A stretch of DNA of 63,887 nt, filler included, from Octopus bimaculoides (lineage: Eukaryota), in the NCBI RefSeq assembly GCF_001194135.2. It is 5 parts of 5 records of this genome, joined end to end, with 100 filler letters (N's around TTAATTAATTAA, not from the genome) between each part and the next. Parts side by side here need not be neighbours in the genome. Positions count along the whole stretch, not along the records: positions 35,466 to 56,052 come from NC_068998.1; 4 more parts are not named here. One strand, given 5' to 3'. Below, piece by piece: positions 37,575 through 56,052 of the stretch; the stretch's first letter is position 1; every line of letters starts with the position of its first letter. Both the position numbers and the translations under genes were made by a program. The notes beneath the pieces are model-generated. The model saw only the letters and a list, made by a program, of their open reading frames with translations. It was not told the origin of the DNA and ran no database searches.

Positions 37575-38155
37575 NNNNNNNNNNNNNNNNNNNNNNNNNN
37601 NNNNNNNNNNNNNNNNNNNNNNNNNNNNNNNNNNNNNNNNNNNNNNNNNNNNNNNNNNNNNNNNNNNNNNNNNNNNNNNNNNNNNNNNNNNNNNNNNNNN
37701 NNNNNNNNNNNNNNNNNNNNNNNNNNNNNNNNNNNNNNNNNNNNNNNNNNNNNNNNNNNNNNNNNNNNNNNNNNNNNNNNNNNNNNNNNNNNNNNNNNNN
37801 NNNNNNNNNNNNNNNNNNNNNNNNNNNNNNNNNNNNNNNNNNNNNNNNNNNNNNNNNNNNNNNNNNNNNNNNNNNNNNNNNNNNNNNNNNNNNNNNNNNN
37901 NNNNNNNNNNNNNNNNNNNNNNNNNNNNNNNNNNNNNNNNNNNNNNNNNNNNNNNNNNNNNNNNNNNNNNNNNNNNNNNNNNNNNNNNNNNNNNNNNNNN
38001 NNNNNNNNNNNNNNNNNNNNNNNNNNNNNNNNNNNNNNNNNNNNNNNNNNNNNNNNNNNNNNNNNNNNNNNNNNNNNNNNNNNNNNNNNNNNNNNNNNNN
38101 NNNNNNNNNNNNNNNNNNNNNNNNNNNNNNNNNNNNNNNNNNNNNNNNNNNNNNN

Positions 38156-38238
<83 letters not shown>

Positions 38239-38893
38239 CACATACATATATATATATATAGTCACACATACATATTACTAGATGCTTTATTGATAGGGAT
38301 TAATTGATGAGTTTTAGGTTTAAGCGTTGCTAAATGCAAACTATTTTGCACAATATGTTGTAGGTCCCTTTTGATAAATTGAAACGGACAAGTTGGTAGC
38401 TTTTAATATTGAAAATGGACATGACCCTTGCAACTTGGAAGAGAAGAGAGAGAGAGAGAGACCCAGAAATTAATGTAATTAGTTTCAAAAATGTGCGTTA
38501 TTGTGCAGAAGATAATGACATTTTAGTCAGCAAATACAGCCTCGAGGTTAATTTGAGTTGAATATTGATGAGGGATGGAAAGAGAGAGAGAAGAAGGCAG
38601 GGAGGAAGAGAGAGAGGGAGAGAGACAGACAGATAGATAGACTGAGAGGCAAACAGATAGATAGAGAGAGAGAGAGAGCTCTATGAAGACAATTTGTGAT
38701 GGAGCAAAGAAGTGGTCATTCTAGGTAATTAGGTCAGTGTTATAAAGTCCTTTGGCAACAACATTCATCACACTTTTAATATTATGAAAATTGACATTTG
38801 CGCTGATGCCTATGGCTAGGAAAAATTAGTCAAGTCTATTTCCCAAAATACACAATGATGTCTTAGTCAGGAAAAGGCTGGATTAGATAATGT

Positions 38894-39274
38894 GTTGGCA
38901 CTCCGTCGCTTACGACGTCGAGGGTTCCAGTTGATCCGATCAACGGAACAGCCTGCTCGTGAAATTAACGTGCAAGTGGCTGAGCACTCCACAGACACGT
39001 GTACCCTTAACGGAGTTCTCGGGGATATTCAGCGTGACACAGTGTGACAAGGCTGACCCTTTGAATTACAGGTACAACAGAAACAGGAAGAAAGAGTGAG
39101 AGAAAGTTGTGGTGGAAGAGTACAGCAGGGTTCGCCACCATCCCCTGCCGGAGCCTTGCGGAGCTTTAGGTATTTTCGCTCAATAAACACTCACAACGCC
39201 CGGTCTGGGAAGCGAAACCGCGATCCTATGACCGTGAGTCCACTGCCCTAACCACTGGGCCATTGCGCCTCCAC
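38894..39274 (-). mobile_element. SINE-B, full length, inserted into a family E repeat
   Basis: 12-bp TSD attagataatgt at 38882-38893 and 39275-39286. Confidence 0.93.
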
Positions 39275-39665
39275 ATTAGATAATGTAGTCCTGAATAATA
39301 GATGGGATAGCCATGGATGGAGCAGCATTGATTAGGGTTGATTTTAGGGTTAAACAACGACAACCTAGAGGTGCCAAAAATAGGATTTCGGTAAATGTAG
39401 TAACAGGCGGAGACCTGAGGCTATTACACATCTGCAAGAACTCCCTGCAGTTTTTAAAATGAGAACTGCATGTTTTTTTCAAGTACTAAATTATAGGGCA
39501 ACATGTTGTATAATGAAAATAAAATGGTCACATCTAAAACAAGGCTGCATCCTAAAATCTGGATGAACCAATCCTCTGCATATTGAATACATTGAGTTTA
39601 TAGGTGGACCCTAAGTGCTAGATTTGCTCAGCCTCCAGGAACTTAGTCCATAGGAACCATATGCC

Positions 39666-40660
39666 TTAACCATTTAGTATACAGATTACTCTGTCAAATG
39701 TAATTCTTATTCATTCACATTGTTTTGAATTAATTCTGTATAATGTCAAAGCTTCAAAATTTCAATCATATGATTCTTTTATTTTTAGAATGACATTTTA
39801 GGGTAGGTGTGAAAGACCAGATCTGACCTGTTTGAACATAGAAAGGTAGAGGATCTATTTTAAAACGGGGTCCACAGTATTTTCTTAACGAAACACTTTG
39901 AAACTTGGAACACTGGTAGAATGTGTCATATAAAACATCTTTTTCTCTTAGTCTTCTTAAAAAAAAAAGAAATCCCTAAGTTATTCCATGTTAAAGTTGT
40001 CATATTTCTGTAATTTCAACCAATCACTGACGTCCATTCAGCCGATATACATTAAGTGCCAACTACATAAACAAACGCTTCTGAAACAATTCTATCGGTG
40101 ATAAAATTATTATTTCCTTGTCAAAAAATGGCTGAAGCATTTNNNNNNNNNNNNNNNNNNNNNNNNNNNNNNNNNNNNNNNNNNNNNNNNNNNNNNNNNN
40201 NNNNNNNNNNNNNNNNNNNNNNNNNNNNNNNNNNNNNNNNNNNNNNNNNNNNNNNNNNNNNNNNNNNNNNNNNNNNNNNNNNNNNNNNNNNNNNNNNNNN
40301 NNNNNNNNNNNNNNNNNNNNNNNNNNNNNNNNNNNGAAAAAAGCAAATAAAACGAAGCTATGGAGATTAAATATGCTTTACACCGCTTAATCAGCCAAAG
40401 GAGTAAATGTAAACAACTGAATACTTGTCAGTGATTGGTTGAAATTATCGAAATAAGACAATTTTTTACATGAAATAAATTCGAATACAAAAATATTTTT
40501 CTGTTCTATAACACAAAATAGATAAGTATACGAAGTTTGAAAGTCTTTCGGTACCAAAAACACTACGTAAAACATTAATGAAAACTGTGGCCCCCGTTTT
40601 AAAATAGATCCCAGGTAGAATATTCTGGCCAGATATGACCAGCTTAAAAACTCAAACCTA
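39666..40660 (+). mobile_element. piggyBac-like MITE split by a nested DNA transposon
   Basis: Host sequence stops at 39850 (...aacatagaaaggtaga) and resumes at 40612 (caggtagaatattctggccagatatg). Confidence 0.65.
39851..40611. mobile_element. Non-autonomous DNA transposon, ~37-bp TIRs starting GGATC, 8-bp TSD
   Basis: Left ggatctattttaaaacggggtccacag; right ctgtggcccccgttttaaaatagatcc; flanks aaggtaga/caggtaga (7/8); sub-terminal inverted pair tttcaaccaatcactgac / gtcagtgattggttgaaa. Confidence 0.85.
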
Positions 40661-41244
40661 GGTCCTAAATCTAAGAACAGCATGTTTCCAAATAGTGATA
40701 ATGCGGTTACAACTAAAGACGAAGGTTGCATTGCCAAGGTTTGGCCCAAACCAATCCAGAGGATATGAAATATGTTTGGGTTTATTGCTCGGCTCCTAAG
40801 CATTGAATTAACTGGTTCCTTGTTATTAGTCTGCCCGAGGAGAGATGAGGTATGCCAGAGTAGGTGGGAGGGTTTCTCAACAACATCAGCACCATGAACA
40901 ATTATAGAGTGAGGGAGAAATAGATCATTAATGTTGTTTTAAGCTTTGCTCTTCGAGGAACATTCATTATTGCATTTATTCAGTGAAATGGAATTCTTTG
41001 AATGAGGCACTTACAGAAGTGATTAGTTATATGTATGCATATATATGTATGTATATAATAGAACAAAACAGGAATTTGGTAAGTCTTTGTAGCTTAATTA
41101 GTAAAGCATTTGGAGGATGTAGATCCCGTAATAACCAATTTTCTTCTTCAATGGAAAAGCATCCCGTTGGAATTCAATACCCTGTTTTACTTGGCTTCCA
41201 CACCCTTTGTTTGTTATTAACCTGCACATCTTTAAAATTCTATC

Positions 41245-41289
<45 letters not shown>

Positions 41290-42658
41290 TATGTATGCAT
41301 GGTATAAAGTATAGGCACACATGCACATACACATGCACACATACATACATACATATACATACATTCATATATGCTCATACATACATATATGAATGTATCT
41401 ATCTTTTCATGTGTATGTGCATGTTCATGTGAGTATGTGTGCGTGTTTGTGTGTGTGTGTGTGTGTGTGTGTGCATACATGTGCATATGTATGTGTGAGC
41501 GTCTTATTGTGTACTGTTCTATGTCAACGGAGAGAAAGACTAAAGAAATATTTCAGTCGAAAAGAGAGCGATGCTTCACACAATCTCAGAAGGAACGGAC
41601 AAGAAGAGGCAGAGGAACTGCAGGATAAAAGAGCAGCCATTTGGAACAAATTGAGGACAAATGAAAGCAACTGCAACAAAGACAACTGATTCATGCAATT
41701 CTGTCATCTGAAATTTCTTTCAACTGGACAAGATCATTGATGTGGACATTTCCAAATTTATGGACACTTAAAGAATTACAAATGGAAGGGTAAATCAAAG
41801 ATTCTTTGTTGCTGCAAAGGAAAGGTCAGTGTTGATCCATTGGCACACACTACACCCAAACTCAGGAAGTACTTAAACAGCGCTGATCCCTGGCCATTGT
41901 TTAAAGGAAAAAAAGTTTAGGAAGTATAAAATTCGTTGGCTTTTAGAACATTCTTGATTTTGCATGTGTTGTTTATGTTTATTTCTCGACTCAATCTGTG
42001 TTGAAAGTTCAAGGAAAGACTAACACAAACTTCAGTTTCTGTTACTATAAGGCAAGATCAAGAGGATAAAGTTTGCTCAGTTTTACTTTTAAGAATCTGA
42101 TGATAAACTTCAAACTAAACTGAGACTGAAACCTAATCATTACGTTTTGAGAGATCTACAAATTCAACAGTTAAATTGCCAGCTTCAAAGTAGCCATTGA
42201 GCTTCCTGATGCACACAATTTTCAGATTGTCCTTCATATTCTGACAAAGCCTTGAAGGCTGCTGTTGCACATTTCAAATCTTGAATCAAAGACGATTGCA
42301 ATAATTCTAAGAATAATTGTGGGAAATATCATAGCAGAGATTGAAAGAACCAGTGTTTGCTATGAATTCAATGCTTCTTTTCCCTATATGCCGCTCTGAA
42401 GATACAGATGGGTAACAAAATGGTCTTCACAGAACTAATACAAGCGATACAAACACATGTGGATTATTTATACAGTTTCCAGGTATGAGGGGACGGTACC
42501 ATGAAACGCACAAGACCAAAGCTCCAGCTTTGCATTGGCTGTATCAGCCATTGTTGAACATGAAGGGTTGAATATTTTTAGAGCCACTTGAAGATAATTA
42601 AATCCAATATAAAAATTTTTACTTCACAATAAGAATAGAATCACTATAAAGAAAATTT

Positions 42659-43156
42659 GTGGAGGTTGTCGTTGTTTAACCCTAAAATCAACCTTAATCA
42701 ATGCTGCTCCATCCATGGCTATCCCATCTATTATTCAGGACTACATTATCTAATGTGGAGGCGCAATGGCCCAGTGGTTAGAGCAGTGGACTCGTGGTCA
42801 TAGGATTGCGGTTTCGATTCCCAGACCGGGCGTTGTGAGTGTTTATTGAGCGAAAACACCTAAAAGCTCCACGAGACTCCGGCAGGGGATGGTGGCGAAC
42901 CCTGCTGTACTCTTTCACCACAACTTTCTCTCCCTTTTACTTCCTGTTTCTGTTTTGCCTGTAATTCAAAGGGGTCAGCCTTGTCACACTGTGTCATGCT
43001 GAATATCCCCGAGAACTACGTTAAGGGTACACGTGTCTGTGGAGTGCTCAGCCACTTGCACGTTAATTTCACGGGCAGGCTGTTCCGTTGATCAGATCAA
43101 CTGGAACCCTTGACATCGTGAGCGACGGAGTGCCAACAACAACAACAACAGCAACA
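42659..43156 (+). mobile_element. SINE-B insertion carrying 92 bp of captured flank at its 5' end
   Basis: TSD aaagaaaattt at 42648-42658 and 43157-43167; SINE body 42755-43137, (CAA)n tail; 42663-42754 is the reverse complement of 39275-39366 (91/92). Confidence 0.9.
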
Positions 43157-43799
43157 AAAGAAAATTTACCATATTTGGTGAGCGAGCAGCAATCACTTAG
43201 CACACCTGGAATAAACATCCTTGCTTAGCTTATAGCCTTAACCGTACGATACTAAATCAACCTAAACATTTATGGATGCCAGCATAATGGAACTGAGGTA
43301 ATTCTTACTAATAACTTTAGCAAGTCAACCATTTCCACTGCAAAGAGATGCATGGAGGTGAACAAAAATGCTGTGTGTTATCCCATTATCTATTGTTAGG
43401 CCATAAATAATGGGATAAATGGGATAATGAATCCGGTGAAACATTTGAGGAAAGCCATCTACTATATCGTATTTACAAGTTCAAGAGGAAGAACATACAA
43501 GAAAGAATATATCTTATTTAACAGGCTCCGTTTTTTTTTTTATGTTGGAATCTTCAGGACCACAAGAATGTAGTCTCATGAAATGACTTGATGAAACATC
43601 ACATTTTAGCCAAGTTTAAAGACATACATAGCCACAGATGAATGGGACTCCCGTGAAATGATGGCAGGAAGCTAACAAAACCAGAAAATATTGATACGGT
43701 TGCCTGTTTAATATTTCTGCCCTCATAACTAATCAAACAATTATTTCTATCCATTAAATCCATGATTGATTTTGGAGAAAAATGGCCATCAAAGTCCTC

Positions 43800-44045
43800 T
43801 GCCTTGTTGCTGTTTAGTCCCAGGTCATCCTTGACCGAACAAACATATAATCAAAAGAATTCCAACCATAACCAAGATCAAAAGCATTCCAACCATGACC
43901 ATCCTGTCTTTTTAGGGTTGTCAAAGACTACTTTATTCAATATGCACTTTTCTATTGTTTTCTCATTTTTTTTTTCTCAATATGGTAGGGTCTGATGTGA
44001 GGGAGATTTGGCTGCTACTTCTAGAGTGTTGTCTGACCACATAGT
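43800..44045 (+). mobile_element. Repeat family E, diverged
   Basis: gttgctgtttagtcccaggtca...cattccaaccatgaccatcctgtcttt...gatgtgagggagatttggctgctacttctag; related pieces near 27362, 29010, 45880 and 52330. Confidence 0.6.
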
Positions 44046-44859
44046 GGTTCTATCACTGGTTTGTGAGTTCTGGCATTACTCCAGTAATTATTCTACTTAC
44101 GGAAGGCATATGTCATATGCTGTAAATGGAAACTCATGAACTAAGATTTAGAAACCCAAACACTAGTGTTGACGAACCAATAAATATCCTACGTAGACTC
44201 AAGTATTGGATTCATACAGAGTTGTCTACAGTGTAGGAATCCATCAATTCCATTGGCAAATGTATTATAAACAGGTCGGATCAAATGTGTATGGTTGGAG
44301 ACTGTCATTGAGAGCTTAGAGTTGTCAAAACAAAGTACTTATTATCCAATGGAACAGTCTGCCATATTGCTTCATGTGAAAGTGACAATGAAGGGGGATC
44401 TGGTTGACTTTGCTGAGACAGCATCATCACCACCACCACCACCACCACCACCACCATCATCATCACCATCAGCATCGTCAGCATCAGCATCATCATCAGT
44501 AATTTTCCATGAGTGGATGCCCTTCCTGTCACCAACCCTCACCTATTTCCAAGCAAGGTGATATTTCCCCTATGGCAGGACATCTACTCACAAGGCTTTG
44601 TCGGCCAGGGGTTGTAGTACACAACACTTGCCCAACGTGCTGTGAAGTGGGATTGAACCCAAAACCATATAGTTAGACAGCGGGCTTCTTAACCTCAAAG
44701 TTATCCCTCCACTTACCAATTAGTAAGAATTACCAAAGTTTCTTTGAGTTGGAATCAATAAATGTTTAGATTGATTTAGTATTCTAAAGCTTTAAGCAGG
44801 GATGTATATCCTGGAAGTGTCAAATGAATTCCATACCAATCCATCGAAAATCTTTTCAT

Positions 44860-45140
44860 CTTTTATTCATTTCATTCTTTGAACTGCAGCCATGTCTGTG
44901 TGTGGTGGTAGTGGGGGGGGGGCACCCCCTTGAAGGGCTTTACTCGAACAAATTGAACCCCAGTACTTATTTATTAAACCCTGGTGTACTTATTCTATCT
45001 CTCTCTTTTGCCAAACTGCTAAGTTGTGGAGACATAAACAAACCAATATCGGTTGTCAAGCGATAATGGGTGTCAAACAGAGATGAAAACACACACATAC
45101 ACACACACACACGCACATGCATACACACACACACACACAC
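44860..45140 (-). mobile_element. SINE-A, older diverged 3' half
   Basis: tacttattctatctctctcttttgccaaactgctaag...tcggttgtcaagcg. Confidence 0.7.
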
Positions 45141-45150
45141 ACATATATAT

Positions 45151-45257
45151 ATCAGATTGGAGTCTGGTGTAGCCACCTGGTCCAACTCAGTCAAATTGTC
45201 CAACCCATGCTAGCATGGAAAGCGGACGTTAAACGATGATGATGATGATGATGATGA
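45151..45257 (+). mobile_element. Family D 3' fragment with (GAT)n tail
   Basis: Matches 78-192. Confidence 0.8.
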
Positions 45258-45297
45258 TATATATATTACCAACCACATATAATTAATGTGTATGTTT

Positions 45298-45403
45298 CGT
45301 GTATTTGCTGGTAGGCTGCGATTTGGAATGGTAGAGAATATTCTCTCAAAGTGGTAGGTGTATTCTCCACCTCACCAAATCGCAGCCTACTGGCAAATAC
45401 ACG
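45298..45403 (+). other. 43-bp-stem hairpin (pre-miRNA-like or palindromic MITE remnant)
   Basis: 45298-45340 pairs with 45361-45403, including two G-U wobbles, a 3x3 internal loop and one A-C mismatch; 20-nt loop. Confidence 0.7.
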
Positions 45404-45475
45404 GGGCTTTTATACTTTACGTATAAGTGACTGATAATGTCTATTACACTAGTACTGCTTCTATTTCATATTTGA

Positions 45476-45518
<43 letters not shown>

Positions 45519-45520
45519 TA

Positions 45521-45732
45521 CAGGGTGGCCCAAAAGTAGGTTTACAGTTATTCAACTATCTCTTTCGCATTCATATATTAACACTTTAGGTCTTAATTAC
45601 AAAAAAATATGAAACTATTATTCTATGCTAATTTAGTTAATAGTAAGATAGAAATTTAAATGTAATAAAATGTTTTAAAAGTAATTTAAAGTGCCTACCT
45701 GATAACTGTAAACCTACTTTTGGGCCACCCTG
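45521..45732. mobile_element. Tc1/mariner-type MITE, 212 bp
   Basis: Perfect 31-bp TIRs cagggtggcccaaaagtaggtttacagttat (45521-45551 and 45702-45732) flanked by TA on both sides. Confidence 0.93.
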
Positions 45733-45984
45733 TATACATATATGTTACCATGCATACGAAAACCTTACTTCTTTCTAATATTGGGGCAGTGAATATTGTA
45801 TTTCCTTTCCAGTATGTTACAAAATCAAGAAAAACCAAAAACAAATTAGATATTGTGAGTCACTACTTTATATATCACACAACCTATTAAATATAGCAGC
45901 CAAAATCTCCCTCAAAACCTCTACTCTAATCACATTGGCTCTCAAACAGTACATACTGTGGTACGTTCATGCGTAAAATGTAAC

Positions 45985-46300
45985 TAAGTGGTTGGGTACT
46001 CCGTCAGATATGATGACATGTGTTCCAGTTGATTCAATCAACGGAACAGCTTGTTCATGAAATTAATGAGCAAGAGACTGGGCCCTCCGGAAAACACCTG
46101 TACCCTTAATGTAGTTCTCAAGGAGATCCAGAGTGACAAACCAAATGAGACAAGGCTGTTCTTTGAACTGCAGGTACAACTCATTTTTACCTGTTGAGTG
46201 AACAGGAGCAACAATGAAATTAGTATCTTTGTTAAAGAACACAGTACACCATTAGTAACCAAACTGCCAACCTTACAATCTAAACCATGTGCCTTCATTG
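45985..46300 (-). mobile_element. Old SINE sharing the SINE-B 3' module but with a different 5' part
   Basis: gttccagttgattcaatcaacggaacagc...gtacccttaatgtagttctca...caaggctg matches the SINE-B tail; beyond caggtacaac it diverges completely from SINE-B. Confidence 0.6.
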
Positions 46301-46386
46301 TTGCTAAGCGCACTATGAAAATAACATTATTATATTTTCTAAAAACGTGAAAACTATAAAAATGAAATTCTAAATATAAATCTTAT

Positions 46387-46776
46387 TCTTTTACTCTTTT
46401 ACTTGTTTCAGTCACTTGACTGTGGCCATGCTGGAGCACCACTTTTAGTCGAGCAAATCGACCCCAGGACTTATTCTTTGTAAGCCTAGTACTTATTCTA
46501 TCGGTCTCTTTTGCCGAACCGCTAAGTTACAGGGACGTAAACACACCAGCATCGGTTGTCAAGCGATGTGGGGGGGGGGACAAACACAGTCACAAACACA
46601 CATATATATATACATATATACAACTGGCTTCTTTCAGTTTCCATCTGCCAATTCCACTCACAAGGCTTTGTTCGGCCTGAGGCTATAGTAGAAGACACTT
46701 GTCCAAAGTGCCACGCAGTGGGACTGAACCCAGACCCATGTGGTTGGTAAGCAAGCTACTTACCACACAGCCACTC
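46387..46776 (-). mobile_element. SINE-A, full length
   Basis: tRNA-like head (gtggctgtgtggtaag; gggttcagtccc), CORE-like ...gacaagtgtctt segment, internal (TA/TG)n, (GTAAAAGA)n tail. Confidence 0.93.
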
Positions 46777-46779
46777 ATT

Positions 46780-46928
46780 CTATAGCTTTGAGATTTTGAT
46801 AATGTGATTGTTAATTTTTAGAATGACATAGTAGAGTAGGTGTGAAAGGCCAGATCTGACCAGTTCAAGCATAGAACATATAGAATATTTTGGGCCAGAT
46901 ATGACTGTTTTAAATGTTAGAGGGTTAA
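46780..46928 (+). mobile_element. piggyBac-like MITE, 3' half
   Basis: Ends taaatgttagagggttaa. Confidence 0.65.
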
Positions 46929-47330
46929 ATCAGTGATGTGTAGCTGAAGTCCCGAAGGTGATCTGCAAAAGACATCTAGAGGGATCATCACATTTGTTGT
47001 TTGAATGTATGCCTTTACAATACATGTGTGGGTTAGATGGAATTTGTTGAGGCAGGTTTTCTGTAGGTGGATTCCCTTCGTGTCATCATCCTCACTTGTT
47101 TACCAAGCAAGATAATATTTCTCCATGACTGGACACATTTTCAAGGAAAATTGGAATCAAATAACAGGGCTTCTATGATATCAACACTGATTTACGACTA
47201 TCACAAGATATCAAGGAGCGCAAACAGAAACACACACACGCACACACACACATACACACACATATGCACACTCACACATACACATGCATACACACACACA
47301 CACATATATATATACATATATACTGTGTTA

Positions 47331-47556
47331 CTCTTTTATTTGTTTCAGTGATTTGACTGTGGCCATGCTGGAACACCGCCTTAAAAGGTCTTAGTTGAAC
47401 AAATCAACCCCAGGCCTTTTTTTTAAAGCCTAGTACTAGTACTTATTCTATTGGTTTCTTTTGCTGAACTGCTAAGTTACGAGGTCGTAAACACACCAAC
47501 ACTGGTTGTCAAATGGTGATGAGGAGACAACACACAAACACACAAGTACAAACAAA

Positions 47557-47604
<48 letters not shown>

Positions 47605-47738
47605 TATGACAAGCTTCTTTCAGTTTCTGTTTGCCAGATCCACTGAGGCTGTAGCAGAAGACACTTGCCCAAGGTACCATGCAGTGGGACTGAAACTTGA
47701 ACCATGTGGTTGGGAAGTAAGCTTCTTACCATACACAG
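47331..47738 (-). mobile_element. SINE-A, older full-length copy
   Basis: Same modules as 46387-46776 with more substitutions. Confidence 0.85.
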
Positions 47739-48223
47739 ATTCTATCACAAAGATTTGGCTGGCTCCAGGCTATGGTAGAATCACTTGCTGAAGGATTGGA
47801 ACCCTCTGCCATTCTGTTTTTTTTTTTTTTGTTTTTTTTGAATAGGTAGAAGTAGTAGTGATGGCTGAAGAAGTAGTAGAAGAAACAGTATATCTGTGGG
47901 CTAAGGATGCTGATGTGTCTTAGCCAATCAGCATTCTTCTGAAGACAGTCCAAGATGTTTGAACGCTTTTTTTGTTTTAACATCCACTTTTGCATACTGG
48001 CATGGGTTAGATGAATCTTACTGAGGTGTATTATTATTTTCTATAGTCAGATGCTCTTTCTGTCTGCAAGCCATACTATTTTTATACAAACCAGGGTATT
48101 TTCATTCCACACCTTACACACAAACACACGTGCGCACATGTGGGGTTCAAAAGGTGAAACCATGGGACTTTTGTTGACTGAAAAATGTAGACAAAATAGT
48201 ATTAATGAGGACCTTGACACAAA

Positions 48224-48417
48224 GGCACTGGTGCTGGTGTCACGTAAAAAAGCACCCAGTCCACTCTGTAAAGTGGTTGGTGTTCGGAAGAGCATTCAGC
48301 TGTAAAAACCATATCAAAACAGACAGTGGAGCTTGCTATGGTCCCCAGGCTTTCCAGGTCCTGTCAAACCATCCAACCCATGCCAGTATGGAAGATGGGC
48401 GTTAAATGATGATGATT
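48224..48417 (+). mobile_element. Family D retroposon 3' part
   Basis: cacgtaaaaaagcaccc...gtggttggtgttcggaagagcattcagctgtaaaa...ccaacccatgccagtatggaagatgggcgttaaatgatgatgat. Confidence 0.75.
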
Positions 48418-48835
48418 ATATATGTATATGTCTGTTATGTGCTTCAAAAGCAGTATTAGATTAAAATGGTCATTTGTGTATCATACTTAAAACAAATACA
48501 TAGCAGAAAGGAAAACTGGAGATAATATTTCTACAAGCATGGTACTGTGTGCATTTGTGATGTACATTGGAAACAAACATGATGGTATTATTTAGCAAGA
48601 AAGCCACTTAATAAACCACCTTCATAAAGAAGTGATGGATAAGAGAATTCTGTACAGTTAAACCCTGACCCTAACCCTCTTGGTAAAGGGAACAGAAGAC
48701 CCTGCTGAAATTTGGAAGACAAGATACCTTGCATGCTATATAATGGTATAAAGCATCTACTGCTTTAGTAATGATTATCCTGAAGGTGTTTTGAATAATG
48801 GGTGATTTCCTTCAGGTGTTATAGACAAGCTGTTT

Positions 48836-48895
<60 letters not shown>

Positions 48896-48897
<2 letters not shown>

Positions 48898-49113
48898 CCT
48901 TTCTACTAGAGGCACAAGGCCTGAAATTTTGGGGGAGGGGGACTAGTTAAATACCTCAACTCCAGTGATTCGCTGGTACTTAATTTATTGACCTTGAAAG
49001 GATGAAAGGCAACGTCGACCCCGGCTGAATTTGAACTCAGAATGCAAAGACAGACAAAATGTTGCTAAGCATTTCACCCAGCGTGCTTACGATTCTGCCA
49101 GCTCACCACCATT
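48896..49113 (-). mobile_element. SINE-C, full length, embedded in (AAT)n
   Basis: (AAT)n at 48838-48895 and 49116-49146 on either side. Confidence 0.88.
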
Positions 49114-49488
49114 AGAATAATAATAATAACAATAATGATAATAATAAGAGGAAATATATCTAACTGTTTTGCCTATGGCTTTATGTCTAATTAAGATATT
49201 ACTTAAAGCTGAGAAGGAGGAACTGACTTTGTGTTTGATATGATTTTGACACCACTTATTTCTGAGAGTAAATCACAGCAAGAACACTTTGGTCTTTGAT
49301 CTCCCCAAAGGCATAAAAATAAATAAATAAATAAAATATAAAATATACCAATCACATGACCGTGTTTGTGTTTATCGTCTTTCTTCTAACCATCCTCTGT
49401 TACAATGATGTCATTTACCTCGGAAAGGAAATTTTAGGGAAGATGGTCAGGACGTGTTGAACCAAACTGAATGCTTTATTTATATATG

Positions 49489-49952
49489 CTCTTTTACTCT
49501 TTTACTTGTTTCAGTCATTATTGACTGCGGCCATGCTGGAGCACCGCCTTTAGTCGAGCAAATCGACCCCAGGACTTATTCTTTGGAAGCCTAGTACTTA
49601 TTCTATCGGTCTCATTTTGCCGAACCGCTAAGTTACGNNNNNNNNNNTACTTATTCTATCGGTCTCATTTTGCCGAACCGCTAAGTTACGGGGACGTAAA
49701 CACACCAGCATCGGTTGTCAAGCGATGTTGGAGGGACAAACACAGACACACACACACACATATATACATATACGTACATATATATATACGACGGGCTTCT
49801 TTCAGTTTCCGTCTACAAAATCCACTCACAAGGCTTTGGTCGGCCCGAGGCTAAAGTAGAAGACACTTGCCCAAGGTGCCACGCAGTGGGACTGAACCCG
49901 GAACCATGTGGTTGGTAAGCAAGGTACTTACCACACAGCCACTCCTGTGCCT
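49489..49952 (-). mobile_element. SINE-A, full length (contains an assembly overlap duplication)
   Basis: Near-consensus copy. Confidence 0.93.
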
Positions 49953-50206
49953 ATATATATTTTTTTCTGTTTAGTGTCAGCCAATTCACAATGTTTCTCA
50001 AGGCCTTTGAGACTGGTAGAGAGGAAAGAAGGAAGGAAGGAAACAAGGAAGTTATGTGGAGGCAGGAGATCTACCCAGAATGCTTACCAAAGAGTGGACT
50101 TACTCAAGGCCCAGATGACGGTATTAAAGCTTGTGATGGTTTAATGCCGCCGCCCAAGAAGAGAAGCAAACCCTCGATGGCATTCCATAATATTTCTTTC
50201 TGCATA

Positions 50207-50470
50207 TTCTTTTACACGTTTCAGTCATTTGACTGTGGCCATGCTGGAGCATCACCTTGAAGGGTTTTAGCCAGAGAAATCGACCCCAGGACTTGTTCTT
50301 AGTAAGCCAAATACTTATTCTATCGGTCTTTTTTGCCGAACTGTTAAAGTTATGGGGAGATAGTTCAGCACAGAGATGAAGTAGAAGACACTTACCAAGG
50401 GTGACATGCAATGGGATTGAACTTAAAACCAAGTAGTTATGAAGTAAAATCTTAAATCCCACAGCAATAC
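50207..50470 (-). mobile_element. SINE-A, old copy with central deletion
   Basis: Tail and diverged head modules joined directly. Confidence 0.7.
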
Positions 50471-50659
50471 TTGCAGCCCCTGTCTGTTGGTTCTTGTCAT
50501 TCACACCAAGGTCAGCCGTTACCTTTCATCTGTTCAAAGCTAATAGAATAACTAGTGTGATGGTCATTACAGCCAAGATTATCCCTCTTCTGTGAACATT
50601 TTAATGCCATGCTTAATTACAAGTAATTACCAAAATTATCATTCCTCACTCCCCCATAC

Positions 50660-50676
50660 CTGTCACAACCACCACC

Positions 50677-50707
<31 letters not shown>

Positions 50708-50990
50708 CCACCACCACTATCGTCATCTTCATCATCATCAACAGTAGCAGCATCACTATTACTCATATCCTTATCATCACAATTATCATCATTGTCATTG
50801 TCATCCTCATCACTCTCATCATCATCATCATCATCATCACCATTACCCTCATCACTATCGTCATCATCATCATCATCATCATCATTATCATTATCACTTT
50901 CCTCATCATGAAGCCATTACCCTCCTTATTGTCATCATCATCATCATCATAGCTGTCATCAATACTGTCATCATCTCCATCAGTACTACG
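50660..50990. repeat. CAC/CAA/CAT trinucleotide tract
   Basis: Direct reading. Confidence 0.92.
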
Positions 50991-51092
50991 ATGCAAGAAA
51001 TATAGTCCTGATATATATATTTTGATATATATATAGTGCACTAACAAAAACATTTTTGATTACTAATTGTAATTATTTTCAAAAAAATGCTG

Positions 51093-51540
51093 AGGCACAA
51101 GAGCGGCTTTACAGGTGCAAGAGTGGCTTTATAGGTGCAGGAGTGGCTGTGTGGTAAGAAGCTTGCTTCCCTACCACTTTGTTCCGGGTTCAGTCCCACT
51201 GCATGGCACCTTGGGCAAGTGTCTTCTACTAAAGCCTCAGGTTGACCAAAGCCTTGTAAATGGATTTGGTAGATGGAAACTGAAAGAAGCCCATCGTATA
51301 TATATAAATATGTGTGTGTGTGTATTTGTGTGTGTGTGTTTGTGTGTGTGTCTGTGTCTGTCCCCCCACGGTCGCTTGACAACCAGTGTTGATGTGTTTA
51401 CGTCCCCGTAACTTAGCATTTCGGCAAAAGAGACCGATAGAATAAGTACTAGGCTTACAAAGAACAAGTCCTGGGGTCGATTTGTTCGACTGAAGGTGGT
51501 GCTCCAGCATGGCCACAGTCAAATGACTGAACCAAGTAAA
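51093..51540 (+). mobile_element. SINE-A, full length, with triplicated 20-bp 5' unit
   Basis: Units at 51093, 51113 and 51133: aggcacaagagcggctttac / aggtgcaagagtggctttat / aggtgcaggagtggctgtgt. Confidence 0.9.
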
Positions 51541-51729
51541 AAAAATAACTGACTGAATATCTCAACTTCTTCTTTCTCCCCCCCCCTCTCTCTCTCAGTC
51601 TCTCTTTCATGTCCTTATAAAATGAACCATCTTTGTTTTTTTATGCTTAGATAAACCTTTTCTAATACTGTTAGTCTCATCGCTATTCTGTGAGTTGCAC
51701 TTTTTTATATGAATAATGGTTTTTGATTT

Positions 51730-52095
51730 AGGTGTAGGGCCAAAGATTTTGAAGGGAGTTGGGTGGGTAGATAGCAATTTCAGTACTTTACGAGTCCTTT
51801 ATTTTTACAGACCTCACTCCCAGCACCAAGAAGGATGAAAGGCAAAATCCACCTCAGCGGGATTTGAACTCAGAACATAAAGGGCTTGAAAGAAATATCA
51901 CAATGCAATTTTTTTCTGATGGTCTGGACTGCATTCAGATAATGTAATCCCTGGGAGGGACAACGATTATTCAATGAGCTGGCAACTAAGTGATCCCGAG
52001 AGGGACAAAAAGCAAAGTTGACCTCAGTAGGATTTGAACCCATAATGTAAAGGACTGGAAGGTATACTGCAAAATATTTTTTCCAGTCGTCTGGG
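51730..52095 (-). mobile_element. Two decayed SINE-C-like fragments
   Basis: ggatgaaaggcaaaatccacctcagcgggatttgaactcagaac (about 51833-51878) and gcaaagttgacctcagtaggatttgaaccc (about 52012-52041). Confidence 0.6.
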
Positions 52096-52204
52096 CTAAA
52101 TCCAGATTATCTGATTTTCCAAAAGAAAAAAAACTTTATTGAATGAGTCAACAAGAAAGAGGTAGAGAGGTAGAGAGAGAGAGGTAGAGAGATAGAGAGA
52201 GAGT

Positions 52205-52266
<62 letters not shown>

Positions 52267-52714
52267 ATTAGTAACTGAAGCCCACAATGGAGCTATAGGC
52301 GTTCACTTGAACCAACAGGGAGCTGATTGCAGCCATTTGAGCCAACAAGAAAGACACTGCATGGTTGCTCGATCTGCTAGAAACAGCAGCCAAATTTCCC
52401 TCAAATCACACCCTGTTACTTTGTATAAAAAAAAAAAAGGCAGGGGGCAGGAAATAATAATGTAGTTCTAGTTTCCTAACTACACTATGCATGAAAAGAA
52501 AAATGTAGGAATAGCCATGAATAGAACACCTTCGAGCAGTAAGAGTCTGTTTGACCAGAACTGACCTAGGATAAGTAATACCTGACATATTCTTCTCCCA
52601 GCAATAGTTTACAGCCACTGGTGCAGTGATACACAGCCCTCCAATTTCTATTCTACCATTATTACAGTGGTCTCTGCTTTTCTTAAGTTTCTAACTCTGT
52701 GCTGCCCTCTACAT

Positions 52715-53711
52715 CAGTCGTTTCTAAACCATTATTTACCTGTGGGCCCTTTTGCTTACTACTCTATTATTGTGGTACACCCCCACTTCTACCCCCTGCT
52801 AGTCATTCAAATGTTTAAAATACCAGCTTTATAAATACTTCTTTCAAAATTCCTATATTGTTATCCACACATTAACTTGCGTAGGTTGAACTGTGTAAAA
52901 CATTAGAAAAAGAAACTCTAGTTGTTTCTTGCAATGAATACATTCAAAGTAACATATTTTCATGGACCCTTAAAATACCATAGTAGATTCCCAATTTTCT
53001 ATTTTGCTTGCTTGGACCCCTTTGATTACTATTTTATTCTGGTTGACCCCCATAGCCATTCCATGTTTAAAAACTAATTTCCTTTGAAATTCCAGTTTTG
53101 TTTTTCATACATTAACTTCCGTAGATTGAATCATGTAAAACATCAGAGAAAGAAACTGACCTGTTTTTTGCAATAAATACATTCAAAGTAAAAAATTTTC
53201 ACAGGCATAGGAGTGGCTGTGTGGTAAGTAGCTTACTTACCAACCACATGGTTCTGGGCTCAGTCCCACTGTGTGGCATCTTGGGCAAGTGTCTTCTACT
53301 ATGACCTCAGGCCGACCAAAGCCTTGTGAGTGGATTTTGTAGACGGAAACTGAAAGAAGCCCGTCGTATACATGTACATATGTATACATGTATATATATA
53401 TGTGTGTGTAAGTGTTTCTGTGTTTGTCTCGCTTGACAACTGATGCTGGTGTGTTTACGTCCCCGTAACTTAGCGGTTCGGCAAAAGAGACTGATAGAAT
53501 AAGAACTAGGCTTCTAAAGAATAAGTCCTGGGGTCGATTTGCTCGACTAAAGGCGGTGCTCCAGCATGGCCACAGTCAAATGACTGAAACAAGTAAAAGA
53601 GACTTTTAAAATCCTACTTTGGATCCTCAATTTACTGTTTTGTTTGTAAGGATCCCTAAAAGTCTTACATGGACCTCAAGAGGTCATATGGATCCTGACT
53701 GAGAGCCACTG
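52715..53711. mobile_element. hAT-type non-autonomous element with internal tandem duplication and nested SINE-A
   Basis: Termini cagtcgtttct... / ...gagagccactg (CAGTGG-type); 8-bp TSD ctctacat (52707-52714) / ctttacat (53712-53719). Confidence 0.75.
53203..53601 (+). mobile_element. SINE-A, full length
   Basis: Near-consensus copy. Confidence 0.93.
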
Positions 53712-54182
53712 CTTTACATAAACCAACTGAATAGTAACAGCATTGCCTATTTTCAATGTCTCTCCTGTGTTTTATTAAATATTTCATCCAATCTTTCCCT
53801 CTTGGAATTTGATACCCACAAGACACTCTCTGCCTGTATTTTTTTCCTGACATGAACAACCTCTAAGAAGTTCAAACTGAACACCATTCCATTTTCATCT
53901 CCCATTATAAACACCACTTTTATTCTCATTTTTGCCTCCTTAGATTAATACAGAGTACATATATTAAAAAAAAAAGGGGATCGAATATATATATGAATGT
54001 ATGTATATATGTATGAATGTATATATGTATGCATGTATGTATAAGAATTTTGCAAAACAAATACATAAATGATTATATATATATATATATGTATGTATAA
54101 TATATATATATGTATATGTATATCTTTATACTTCTCTGTCTCTCATTGTTACACACACACACATACACACACATGCACAAGG

Positions 54183-54218
<36 letters not shown>

Positions 54219-54354
54219 NNNNNNNNNNNNNNNNNNNNNNNNNNNNNNNNATGTATTAGGAAGAATAATTAACTCAGGTACACATAAATTCTTCTAAGAC
54301 CAATATTCTTTCTCCTTGGTTGTCTCTTAGGAAAAAAAAAAAAAAAAGAAAATA

Positions 54355-54415
<61 letters not shown>

Positions 54416-54514
54416 TAATTGCAAAACCAATATCGAATGAGAATAAACTGCTTTATATCTGGTATATTTAATCTAGCATCTATTACCTAGAAAGAAAAAG
54501 AAAAAAAAGGAAGC

Positions 54515-54557
<43 letters not shown>

Positions 54558-55328
54558 GAAGAAAGGAAGGAAGAAAGAAAGAAAGAGAACACCTGGATAA
54601 TATCACATTGATCCTTAAGACCAGCATCACCAATGACATTAATGGCTAACTGGCTTAGCTTATTGATCTATTCAATATCTGAATTATTATATAATGAGAA
54701 TATTTAATTTAAACAGTGCTAAAATACTGAAGGAAATCTTACAGTAGCTATGTTCTATTGTGTGCGTTTGTTAGTTGTATTCTAATTCATTTTAAAGCAT
54801 TCTGAAGGTCAATGAAAATAAAGGTTTTAGAATATTTAGGTTTTCAAAAGAATATTTATGATGATTAAATGCAAATATGAATTTATTTACTTCATATAAA
54901 ATGATATTTCGTATATTTTTTTCTCCCTACTTTACCTTAAAAAAAATGTTATTTTCATAATGCAATCTTAATTTTAAACACTATGATCAATATGTTTTGG
55001 TATATTCTTGAAAAAAATAATAATAATCTTTCTTTTTTGTTCTTTTTCTTTTGTTTCTTGTTTTTTTTAATATACATTTTCTTAAAGTTATTAAAACACT
55101 TTGTTCTTTGTTATGCAAAAGTGAAAATTTCACATACAATGGCTATGATGATGATGATGATGACAAAATTTGCATAGTAAACAATTAAGAAAAATATTAC
55201 TCAAGAAAAATGTATTAAACTGAAAATATTTTAAATTTAGTTTCTGATAATCATATATTTTTTTTTATTTTAGACAATTTTAGGATGGGTATACAGTTTA
55301 AATTATTCATATCTAAAATCATACTTAT

Positions 55329-55365
<37 letters not shown>

Positions 55366-55620
55366 ATTATATATACATATATGTATATACACACACATAT
55401 ATATATATATATGCATATATATATTCATGTATATATACATACATGTATATACATATTTATATATATATATACATATATATATAGGGAATTATGCCATGAA
55501 TGTCATTAGCTTACAGCTGTTTCTGCTATGGCATGCAATTCACTCACAGTTGAATGCTTATGTAAGACCTCATAGCTTAATCAAAGTTTCAAAAATGAGG
55601 TGCAATTTTATTTAGGAAAA

Positions 55621-55785
55621 CACAGGAGTGGCTGTGTGGTAAGTAGCTTGCTTTACTAACCACATGGTTCCAGGTTGGGCAAGTGTCTTCTTCTATAGTC
55701 TGAGGCCAACCAAAGCCTTGTGAGTGAATTTGGTAGACAGAAACTGAAAGAAGCCCATCGTGTATATATGTATATATATATATAT
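55621..55785 (+). mobile_element. SINE-A 5' half with B-box deleted
   Basis: caggagtggctgtgtggtaagtagc...ggttccaggttgggcaagtgtc lacks cagtcccactgcgtggcacc. Confidence 0.8.
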
Positions 55786-56052
55786 ACTAGCAGAAATACC
55801 CGGCTTTGCCCGGGTTAAAGAGAATAATGAAATCTAAAAACGCTGTCTAGACTACGCAACCCTCAACTGTTAGTAGCTACGATACCATATTTCTACATTA
55901 ATAACTCTCCAATCCATGCCAGCATGGAACATAGACATTAAGTGGAATGCCAGTGTCTCATCTAGGAGGGCCTTGAAATCAATATTACCAACTGGGGACT
56001 ATGTGTGTCGCAGTGATAATAAAAAGACCCAAAGGAGGTCTGCAACGAAATA
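55786..56052 (+). mobile_element. Helitron/Helentron-like non-autonomous element end
   Basis: Begins actag followed by GC hairpin acccggctttgcccgggt, inserted in a (TA)n run; family call from recalled end structure. Confidence 0.45.

What the first reader, a model, noticed from the sequence alone, without database searches (positions are those of the whole stretch)
39275..43167. SINE that captured the flank of a neighbouring SINE 3.4 kb away
Seen: between its own TSDs (aaagaaaattt) the 42.7-kb insertion reads gtgg + 92 bp + full SINE-B + (CAA)n. The 92 bp (42663-42754) match the reverse complement of 39275-39366, the 5' flank of the oppositely oriented SINE-B at 38894-39274, at 91/92, yet the two SINE bodies differ at roughly 20 positions. 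The left junction gtggagg is the SINE's first 7 nt, overlapping the flank by an agg microhomology. Inference: one-sided strand invasion of the nearby homologous SINE during integration or break repair, copy-out into flank, and microhomology rejoining. This is a SINE-mediated route for moving unique DNA distinct from 3' transduction.
Basis: partly seen in the sequence, partly recalled or inferred. Interest (0 to 1): 0.7.

Follow-up and report, generated by a model that had tools for sequence, protein, structure and literature searches.

The report
SINE copied its neighbour's flank
One short retrotransposon (SINE) carries, inside its own insertion scars, 92 bp of unique DNA copied from beside an inverted sister copy 3.4 kb away. 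This is most likely a footprint of ordinary homology-guided break repair or template switching, so it is a clean example of a known process and not a new way of moving DNA.

Summary
42663-42754 equals the reverse complement of 39275-39366 at 91/92. It lies between a 4-nt stub (gtgg) and a full SINE-B with a (CAA)n tail, and the whole unit is bracketed by a perfect 11-bp duplication that occurs nowhere else in the piece.

The 92 bp contain the left SINE's own 12-bp target-site duplication, so the copying went left to right.

The best fit is DNA-templated copying. A 3' end in the head of the right SINE paired with the inverted left SINE, was extended 92 nt into that copy's flank, and rejoined at a 3-nt microhomology (agg) to the retained first 7 nt of the right SINE. 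Four things support this:
- the gtgg stub;
- the 3.4-kb proximity;
- the canonical tail;
- three SINE-B copies that are equidistant (5.5-6.1%), so right is not nested with left.

The flank-versus-body divergence contrast is only marginal (Fisher one-sided 0.029; 0.11 without CpG sites).

5' transduction from a read-through transcript and an assembly artefact remain possible but less likely.

No outside sequence of this genome could be reached, so copy number, alleles and the family consensus are untested. The mechanism class is already known (one-sided invasion plus end joining, Alu/Alu template switching). Interest is modest.

The parts
42648..42658 (+). 5' target-site duplication of the right (R) unit, AAAGAAAATTT
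   Evidence: Only two copies in the window, at the two ends of the unit; 0.01 expected by chance.
42659..42665 (+). Stub gtgg + agg, equal to the first 7 nt of SINE-B. gtgg (42659-42662) is absent from the donor flank. agg (42663-42665) is the 3-nt microhomology shared by the SINE head and the donor flank.
   Evidence: At this position the donor reads ctct-agg.
42663..42754 (+). Captured 92 bp, a copy of the left SINE's unique 5' flank. It includes that SINE's 12-bp TSD at 42743-42754.
   Evidence: 91/92 match to the reverse complement of 39275-39366. TSD 12-mer located. No other copy in the piece.
42755..43137 (+). Right SINE-B body (R). A box TGGCCCAGTGG at position 13, B box GGTTTCGATTCC at position 56.
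43134..43156 (+). (CAA)n tail of R
   Evidence: direct reading.
43157..43167 (+). 3' target-site duplication of the R unit
38894..39274 (-). Left SINE-B (L), inverted relative to R. It is the donor of the head and flank. Its tail is reduced to caac and its B box is mutated.
38882..38893 (-). 3' TSD of L (ACATTATCTAAT on the SINE strand)
39275..39366 (-). Donor flank: the unique 5' flank of L. Its first 12 nt (39275-39286) are L's 5' TSD.
40143..40335 (.). Assembly gap in the spacer between L and R. It lies at the centre of a diverged foldback with arms about 39851-40041 and 40417-40611.
36587..36894 (-). Third SINE-B copy (C3), cut off by gap 36021-36586. Used as the outgroup.
45988..46180 (-). 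Diverged (77-79%) fragment matching the 3' part of SINE-B (C4)

Best explanation
R began as an ordinary SINE-B retrotransposition: an 11-bp TSD, a full element and a (CAA)n tail. L was already in place 3.4 kb away, in inverted orientation and head to head with R.

Later, or less probably while R's 5' end was being sealed, a DNA 3' end lying within the first 27 nt or so of R's head paired with the homologous head of L. That end arose from a double-strand break or a stalled nascent strand. It was extended by a DNA polymerase through L's 5' end and 92 nt into L's unique flank. It then dissociated and was rejoined at a 3-nt microhomology (agg) to the other end, which still carried R's original first 7 nt (gtggagg).

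The product is TSD - gtgg/agg - 89 nt of L flank - gtggagg... - R body - tail - TSD. The inverted-repeat arms grew from 381 to 473 nt.

Shown: the structure, the direction L to R, the junction sequences, and the equidistance of the SINE copies. Inferred: the break or stall, the polymerase step, and the timing.
For: 1. **R is a bona fide TPRT insertion.** It has a perfect 11-bp TSD found nowhere else and a canonical SINE 3' end plus (CAA)n tail.
2. **Direction.** The 92 bp carry L's own 12-bp TSD next to the SINE head. They are therefore L's native flank copied into R.
3. **The stub.** The 4 nt between R's TSD and the captured flank are gtgg. With the flank's agg they rebuild the SINE's first 7 nt. 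A retained recipient end predicts this. By chance it is about 1/256.
4. **The two junctions.** One junction is hidden in homology: R and L show no difference across the flank-SINE boundary until SINE position 28. The other is a 3-nt microhomology. This is the signature of one-sided invasion plus end joining, or of a two-step template switch.
5. **R's body is not a daughter of L.** R-L, R-C3 and L-C3 differ by 5.5, 6.1 and 5.8%. Private changes number 10, 9 and 11, a star-like pattern. The flank differs by 1.1%. The best change point falls at SINE position 27.
6. **Proximity.** A donor 3.4 kb away in cis is what homology-directed repair favours. This rests on established knowledge. LINE-mediated integration has no known local preference.
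7. **Tails.** L has almost no tail (caac) while R has about 8 CAA units. This fits R coming from a normal master RNA.
Against: - The divergence contrast is statistically weak: Fisher one-sided 0.029 for all sites, 0.11 for non-CpG sites, change-point permutation p=0.08.
- The polarisation rests on a single outgroup copy.
- SINE-internal bases in what looks like a gapped short-read scaffold may be less reliable than unique flanks. C3 is truncated by a gap.
- L and R lie on different contigs, so their linkage depends on scaffolding. The symmetric foldback across the gap supports that linkage.
- No allele, sister species or genome-wide copy count could be examined.
- Whether the event was post-insertional or happened at integration is unresolved.
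Confidence: 0.62

Rival explanations
1. 5' transduction. A transcript that started at least 92 nt upstream of L (read-through or an upstream promoter) ran through L. The partner LINE's machinery reverse-transcribed it into the R site. R is then a retrocopy of flank + L.
For: The extra sequence is contiguous with L's 5' flank and lies inside R's TSDs, with a tail at the 3' end. 5' transduction is documented for L1 and SVA (for example PMC12593883, found). CpG decay could inflate body divergence: 9 of 22 substitutions are at CpG, and CpG o/e is 0.36 in flanks against 0.65-0.87 in the SINEs. With CpG sites removed, the flank/body contrast is not significant (p=0.11).
Against: - gtgg is unexplained (about 1/256 by chance).
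- R is no closer to L than to an unrelated third copy.
- Landing within 3.4 kb of the source is roughly a 1e-5 to 1e-6 event for random integration into a large genome (inference).
- L lacks the (CAA)n tail that the daughter has, and none of L's 3' flank was carried along.
- A pol III SINE with an internal promoter normally starts at its own +1.
Confidence: 0.17
2. Assembly artefact. The 92 bp were placed at R by a misjoin or gap-closing error at the repeated SINE head, and the real R is a plain SINE insertion.
For: The scaffold has many N gaps, and one of them truncates a SINE-B copy. The 87-nt stretch between R's two nearest private markers (42694 and 42782) is identical in L and R, so a short-k graph could cross over there.
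Against: The left junction (tttgtgg|aggttgtcg) shares only 3 nt with the L locus. That is far below any assembler overlap, so its k-mers must exist in reads. R context is consistent on both sides of the segment, with matching TSDs. The captured copy carries its own private base at 42694.
Confidence: 0.08
3. Composite or dispersed element. Either 92 bp + SINE-B is a multicopy subfamily, or both SINEs inserted independently at the same site of an older repeat.
For: Copy number in the genome could not be checked.
Against: - The 92 bp end in L's TSD, whose second copy lies on the far side of L, so they are L's target DNA and not part of an element.
- R lacks that TSD on its 3' side and has a different TSD outside the 92 bp.
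- C3 has an unrelated 5' flank.
- There is no further copy of the 92 bp, or of 426 bp of L flank, in the piece.
Confidence: 0.05

Closest known systems
One-sided invasion / coupled homologous and non-homologous double-strand-break repair (Belmaaza and Chartrand 1994, listed in the references of PMC4888836; Richardson and Jasin 2000 cited from my own knowledge)
   Same: One end uses homology to invade an ectopic donor. Synthesis runs past the homology into donor-specific flank. The new end is then joined to the other break end with little or no homology. The donor is unchanged.
   Different: Those events were seen in engineered reporters. This one is a fixed natural event between two dispersed SINE copies, inferred from sequence alone.
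Alu/Alu-mediated rearrangement by template switching or MMBIR, and mutagenic break repair between diverged Alus (PMC6071635, PMC4356517; FoSTeS/MMBIR section of PMC4888836)
   Same: Diverged SINE copies a few kb apart serve as the homology for a switch of template. A second junction forms at microhomology.
   Different: Those events are usually scored as deletions, duplications or chimeric Alus. Here the outcome is a 92-bp templated insertion that lengthens an inverted repeat, with no loss of sequence.
5' transduction by L1 and SVA retrotransposons (PMC12593883)
   Same: Unique DNA from the source element's 5' flank ends up inside the TSDs of a new copy.
   Different: Transduction is RNA-mediated and lands anywhere in the genome, and the daughter body derives from the source. 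Here there is a SINE-head stub at the junction, the source lies 3.4 kb away, and the body is not nested with the source.
Expansion of inverted-repeat boundaries in plastid genomes by gene conversion or break repair (Goulding et al. 1996; from my own knowledge, not checked here)
   Same: One arm of an inverted repeat is extended by copying the sequence that flanks the other arm.
   Different: A different genome compartment and much larger repeats. Here the arms are retrotransposon copies.
Templated insertions in polymerase-theta end joining (PMC2895639, listed)
   Same: Nearby sequence is copied into a repair junction and sealed at microhomology.
   Different: Those inserts are typically a few to tens of nt and are primed by microhomology on both sides. 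Here priming used at least 27 nt, and probably far more, of SINE homology and copied 92 nt.

Membership tests
tRNA-derived SINE inserted by target-primed reverse transcription | Internal pol III A and B boxes in the 5' head | tested here: met
   A box TGGCCCAGTGG in R, L and C3. B box GGTTTCGATTCC in R and C3, mutated to GGTTTCGCTTCC in L (regex).
tRNA-derived SINE inserted by target-primed reverse transcription | The head is recognisable as a tRNA | tested here: not met
   ARAGORN found none. The Rfam tRNA model gave no hit even at E<=10 on the head alone. tRNA origin therefore rests on the boxes only.
tRNA-derived SINE inserted by target-primed reverse transcription | Target-site duplications and a 3' simple-repeat tail | tested here: met
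   R: 11-bp TSD and (CAA)n tail. L: 12-bp TSD with the tail reduced to caac.
tRNA-derived SINE inserted by target-primed reverse transcription | Dispersed multicopy family | tested here: inconclusive
   Three good copies plus one diverged fragment in 20.6 kb.
5' transduction | Extra 5' sequence contiguous with the source's flank and inside the daughter's TSDs | tested here: met
5' transduction | The daughter element derives from the source element (nested with it, with the same divergence as the transduced flank) | tested here: inconclusive
   R, L and C3 are equidistant, which argues against nesting. The flank/body contrast is only marginal: p=0.029 for all sites, 0.11 for non-CpG sites.
5' transduction | The 5' junction joins the target directly to transcript-derived sequence | tested here: not met
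   Four extra nt, gtgg, rebuild the SINE head together with agg.
One-sided invasion / template-switch repair between repeats | A homologous donor is present and unchanged; one junction lies within homology | tested here: met
   L is intact with both TSDs. R and L are identical across the flank-head boundary up to SINE position 27.
One-sided invasion / template-switch repair between repeats | The second junction is at microhomology and retains the recipient's original end | tested here: met
   agg microhomology, with the gtggagg stub next to R's TSD.
One-sided invasion / template-switch repair between repeats | A recipient allele existed before the event (plain R without the 92 bp) | not testable with these tools
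   No other individual, haplotype or species of this genome was reachable.

The most novel reading that the evidence does not exclude
Flank capture between neighbouring inverted SINE copies could be recurrent in this SINE-dense genome. Repeat pairs would then progressively extend their homology into unique DNA. That would seed long inverted repeats or palindromes and copy short unique segments, possibly including regulatory or exonic ones, between nearby sites. It would be a DNA-level counterpart to transduction.
Probability: 0.1. Interest if true: 0.55.

Novelty: new member of a known kind. Interest (0 to 1): 0.3.

Why it matters
If the reading is right, this locus is an unusually legible natural footprint of homology-primed, microhomology-resolved repair between dispersed repeats. 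Donor, recipient, both junctions, the retained recipient stub and the intact TSDs are all visible.

It shows that SINE pairs can lengthen their own inverted homology, and so their potential for later instability. It also shows they can duplicate small pieces of unique DNA locally.

There is a practical caution too. Extra 5' sequence inside TSDs should not automatically be scored as 5' transduction, and SINE presence/absence markers can carry post-insertional changes.

It does not reveal a new mechanism.

Tried and rejected
**Searches for outside sequence, all negative**
- Exact look-ups of three window ORFs found nothing on record: the flank+head ORF 42657-42803, the L-flank ORF 39276-39482, and the spacer ORF 40387-40803.
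- A SINE 19-mer scanned against viral contigs gave 0 hits. Against metagenome contigs it gave 2 hits, both bare 19-mer chance matches with no SINE homology.
- A protein search with a SINE-derived peptide found no candidate.
- A full-text search for six SINE k-mers found no paper.
- As a result, no family consensus, allele or sister species was available.

**Searches for coding sequence**
- I looked for an exon that could lead to orthologous loci. The piece has no convincing coding stretch.
- Pfam found nothing in 41.5-42.6 kb.
- I ran no further search on junk ORFs.

**RNA family searches**
- Rfam on the whole piece returned only microsatellite-driven miRNA noise.
- The tRNA models do not call the SINE head.

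**Models rejected**
- The 85-92 bp as a mobile element with a 7-bp TSD. It contains L's TSD, so it is L's target DNA.
- Independent insertion of both SINEs at the same site of an older repeat. R lacks that TSD on its 3' side, and homology does not continue past the SINE.
- L derived from R. L's TSD abuts the SINE, not the 92 bp.
- A mate-pair circularisation junction. The orientation is wrong, and two junctions would be needed.
Full report
**What is there**

The piece (35466-56052) is AT-rich, microsatellite-rich, SINE-dense eukaryotic DNA with several assembly gaps. It holds three good copies of a roughly 383-nt element, called SINE-B here:
- R at 42755-43137 (+);
- L at 38894-39274 (-);
- C3 at 36587-36894 (-), truncated by the gap 36021-36586.

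There is also a diverged 3' fragment, C4, at 45988-46180. The head carries pol III A and B boxes, although neither ARAGORN nor the Rfam tRNA model recognises it as a tRNA.

R ends in about eight CAA repeats. The whole R unit is bracketed by AAAGAAAATTT at 42648-42658 and 43157-43167. These are the only two copies of that 11-mer in the window, against 0.01 expected by chance.

L is bracketed by its own 12-bp duplication, ACATTATCTAAT, at 38882-38893 and 39275-39286.

**The observation**

Between R's 5' TSD and R's head lie gtgg (42659-42662) and then 92 bp (42663-42754). These 92 bp equal the reverse complement of 39275-39366 at 91/92. The alignment shows homology beginning exactly at agg, where L has ctct upstream and R has gtgg. 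gtgg+agg repeats the first 7 nt of the SINE.

The 92 bp, and 426 bp of L's flank, have no other copy in the piece.

The last 12 nt of the captured segment are L's target-site duplication. The segment is therefore L's native target DNA, L was already inserted when the copy was made, and the copying went from L to R.

The bodies differ at 22 substitutions and 2 indels.

**The gap**

The gap 40143-40335 lies in the spacer and does not interrupt either repeat unit. It does put L and R on different contigs.

Two nested inverted-repeat pairs straddle it: 39993-40041 with 40417-40465 at 84%, and 39851-39881 with 40581-40611 at 94%. Both are symmetric about 40229-40231, within 10 nt of the gap's midpoint. 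The gap therefore sits in the centre of a diverged foldback. The two contigs are very probably adjacent in the stated orientation, and the estimated gap length is about right. No reading frame is at stake.

**How strong is the flank-versus-body contrast?**

It is less strong than it looks.
- Flank 1/92 against body 24/383 columns gives Fisher one-sided p=0.029 (two-sided 0.064).
- Nine of the 22 substitutions are at CpG. The genome is CpG-depleted (o/e 0.36 in unique flanks) while the SINEs still hold 0.65-0.87.
- At non-CpG sites the contrast is 1/90 against 15/331, p=0.11.
- A change-point scan puts the best break at column 119, which is SINE position 27. Its permutation p is 0.08.

The contrast is suggestive, not decisive. 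SINE-internal bases in a gapped scaffold may also be less trustworthy than unique flanks.

**Relationship of the copies**

Over the 308 columns shared with C3, the pairwise differences are R-L 5.5%, R-C3 6.1% and L-C3 5.8%. Private changes number 10 (R), 9 (L) and 11 (C3). This is a star: R is no closer to L than to an unrelated copy 6 kb away.

If R were a retrocopy of L, the copy would have had to be made immediately after L inserted. The flank should then also be about 5% diverged, which returns to the marginal test above.

Two further details fit independent origin:
- R has a full (CAA)n tail and none of L's 3' flank, whereas L's tail is just caac.
- R and L carry different halves of two decayed CGCG sites.

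**Mechanism**

The model that accounts for every feature is DNA-templated copying from L.
1. R first existed as a plain insertion: TSD-gtggaggcgc...-tail-TSD.
2. A 3' end within R's first 27 nt or so, from a break or a stalled nascent strand, paired with the inverted L head.
3. It was extended through L's 5' end and 92 nt into L's flank.
4. It was released and rejoined at agg to the end that still carried gtggagg.

This yields exactly TSD-gtgg-agg-flank-gtggagg-body. One junction is invisible in homology and the other sits at a 3-nt microhomology. The TSDs stay intact, the body keeps R's own sequence, and the donor is untouched.

It also explains the proximity. Ectopic repair prefers donors nearby in cis, whereas LINE-mediated integration has no known local bias (established knowledge, not tested here).

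I cannot tell a break-repair version (SDSA plus MMEJ) from a replicative two-step template switch (FoSTeS/MMBIR). I also cannot exclude that it happened while R's 5' end was being sealed. That last version needs more steps to regenerate gtgg.

**Rivals**

- **5' transduction.** It explains the position inside the TSDs. It does not explain the gtgg stub (about 1/256 by chance), the star-like relationship, the tail, or a landing 3.4 kb from the source.
- **Assembly artefact.** It would require an assembler to join sequences that share only 3 nt. It would also have to restore R context on both sides. The captured copy even has a private base at 42694.
- **Composite subfamily, or parallel insertion into an older repeat.** This is contradicted by the arrangement of the two different TSDs and by C3's unrelated flank. 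Genome-wide copy number remains untested.

**Comparison with what is known**

The mechanism class is established:
- one-sided invasion coupled to end joining (Belmaaza and Chartrand 1994, listed in the references of PMC4888836);
- FoSTeS/MMBIR (PMC4888836);
- Alu/Alu-mediated rearrangement and mutagenic repair between diverged Alus (PMC6071635, PMC4356517).

Inverted-repeat boundary expansion in plastids is a close formal analogue (from my own knowledge). 5' transduction (PMC12593883) resembles the product but not the junction.

I therefore rate this as a new, unusually legible member of a known kind. Interest is modest.

**Limits**

All attempts to reach other sequence from this genome failed, and no exon was found that could lead to orthologous loci. 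Read support, alleles, the family consensus and genome-wide copy number are left for the next steps listed.

Noticed in passing
window 39851-40611 (gap 40143-40335 at the centre): A diverged foldback. Two nested inverted-repeat pairs (39993-40041 with 40417-40465 at 84%; 39851-39881 with 40581-40611 at 94%) share a symmetry centre at 40229-40231, inside the assembly gap. The gap probably hides the hairpin centre of a palindromic element.
   Followed up: partly
window 42935-42958 (R) and 39212 (L): R-private substitutions create two TTTT runs (pol III terminators) at SINE positions 181 and 199. An L-private A-to-C change hits the B box (GGTTTCGCTTCC). Both copies look disabled as pol III sources today.
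   Followed up: partly
window 38300-44400 unique parts versus SINE-B copies: CpG observed/expected is 0.36 in unique flanks but 0.65-0.87 in the SINE-B copies. The genome is CpG-depleted, and the SINEs are young enough to be still decaying. Two CGCG sites decayed differently in L and R.
   Followed up: partly
window 44923-55786: A second repeat family of about 400 bp, unrelated to SINE-B, with at least 8 copies or fragments in 11 kb. Copies include 46394-46776, 47316-47735, 49482-49968, 50205-50358, 51130-51541, 53187-53601 and 55675-55786, at 75-95% pairwise identity.
   Followed up: no
window 36021-36586, 37575-38155, 54219-54250: The assembly gaps are bordered by (TA)n/(TG)n microsatellites. 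One gap cuts SINE-B copy C3 in mid-element, which suggests a short-read assembly that struggles inside repeats.
   Followed up: no
window 39750-39843 and 46784-46876: A further small dispersed repeat of 94 bp at 81% identity. The second copy abuts a copy of the 400-bp family.
   Followed up: no
window 41741-41917 (+): One frame reads CCCKGKVSVDPLAHTTPKLRKYL. From memory this resembles the N-terminal motif of Helitron Rep/Hel proteins. Pfam found nothing in any forward frame of 41.5-42.6 kb, so the resemblance is unsupported.
   Followed up: partly
window 45988-46180 (-): A fragment 77-79% identical to the 3' half of SINE-B only. It could be an older relative or the 3' end of the partner LINE from which the SINE tail derives.
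   Followed up: no
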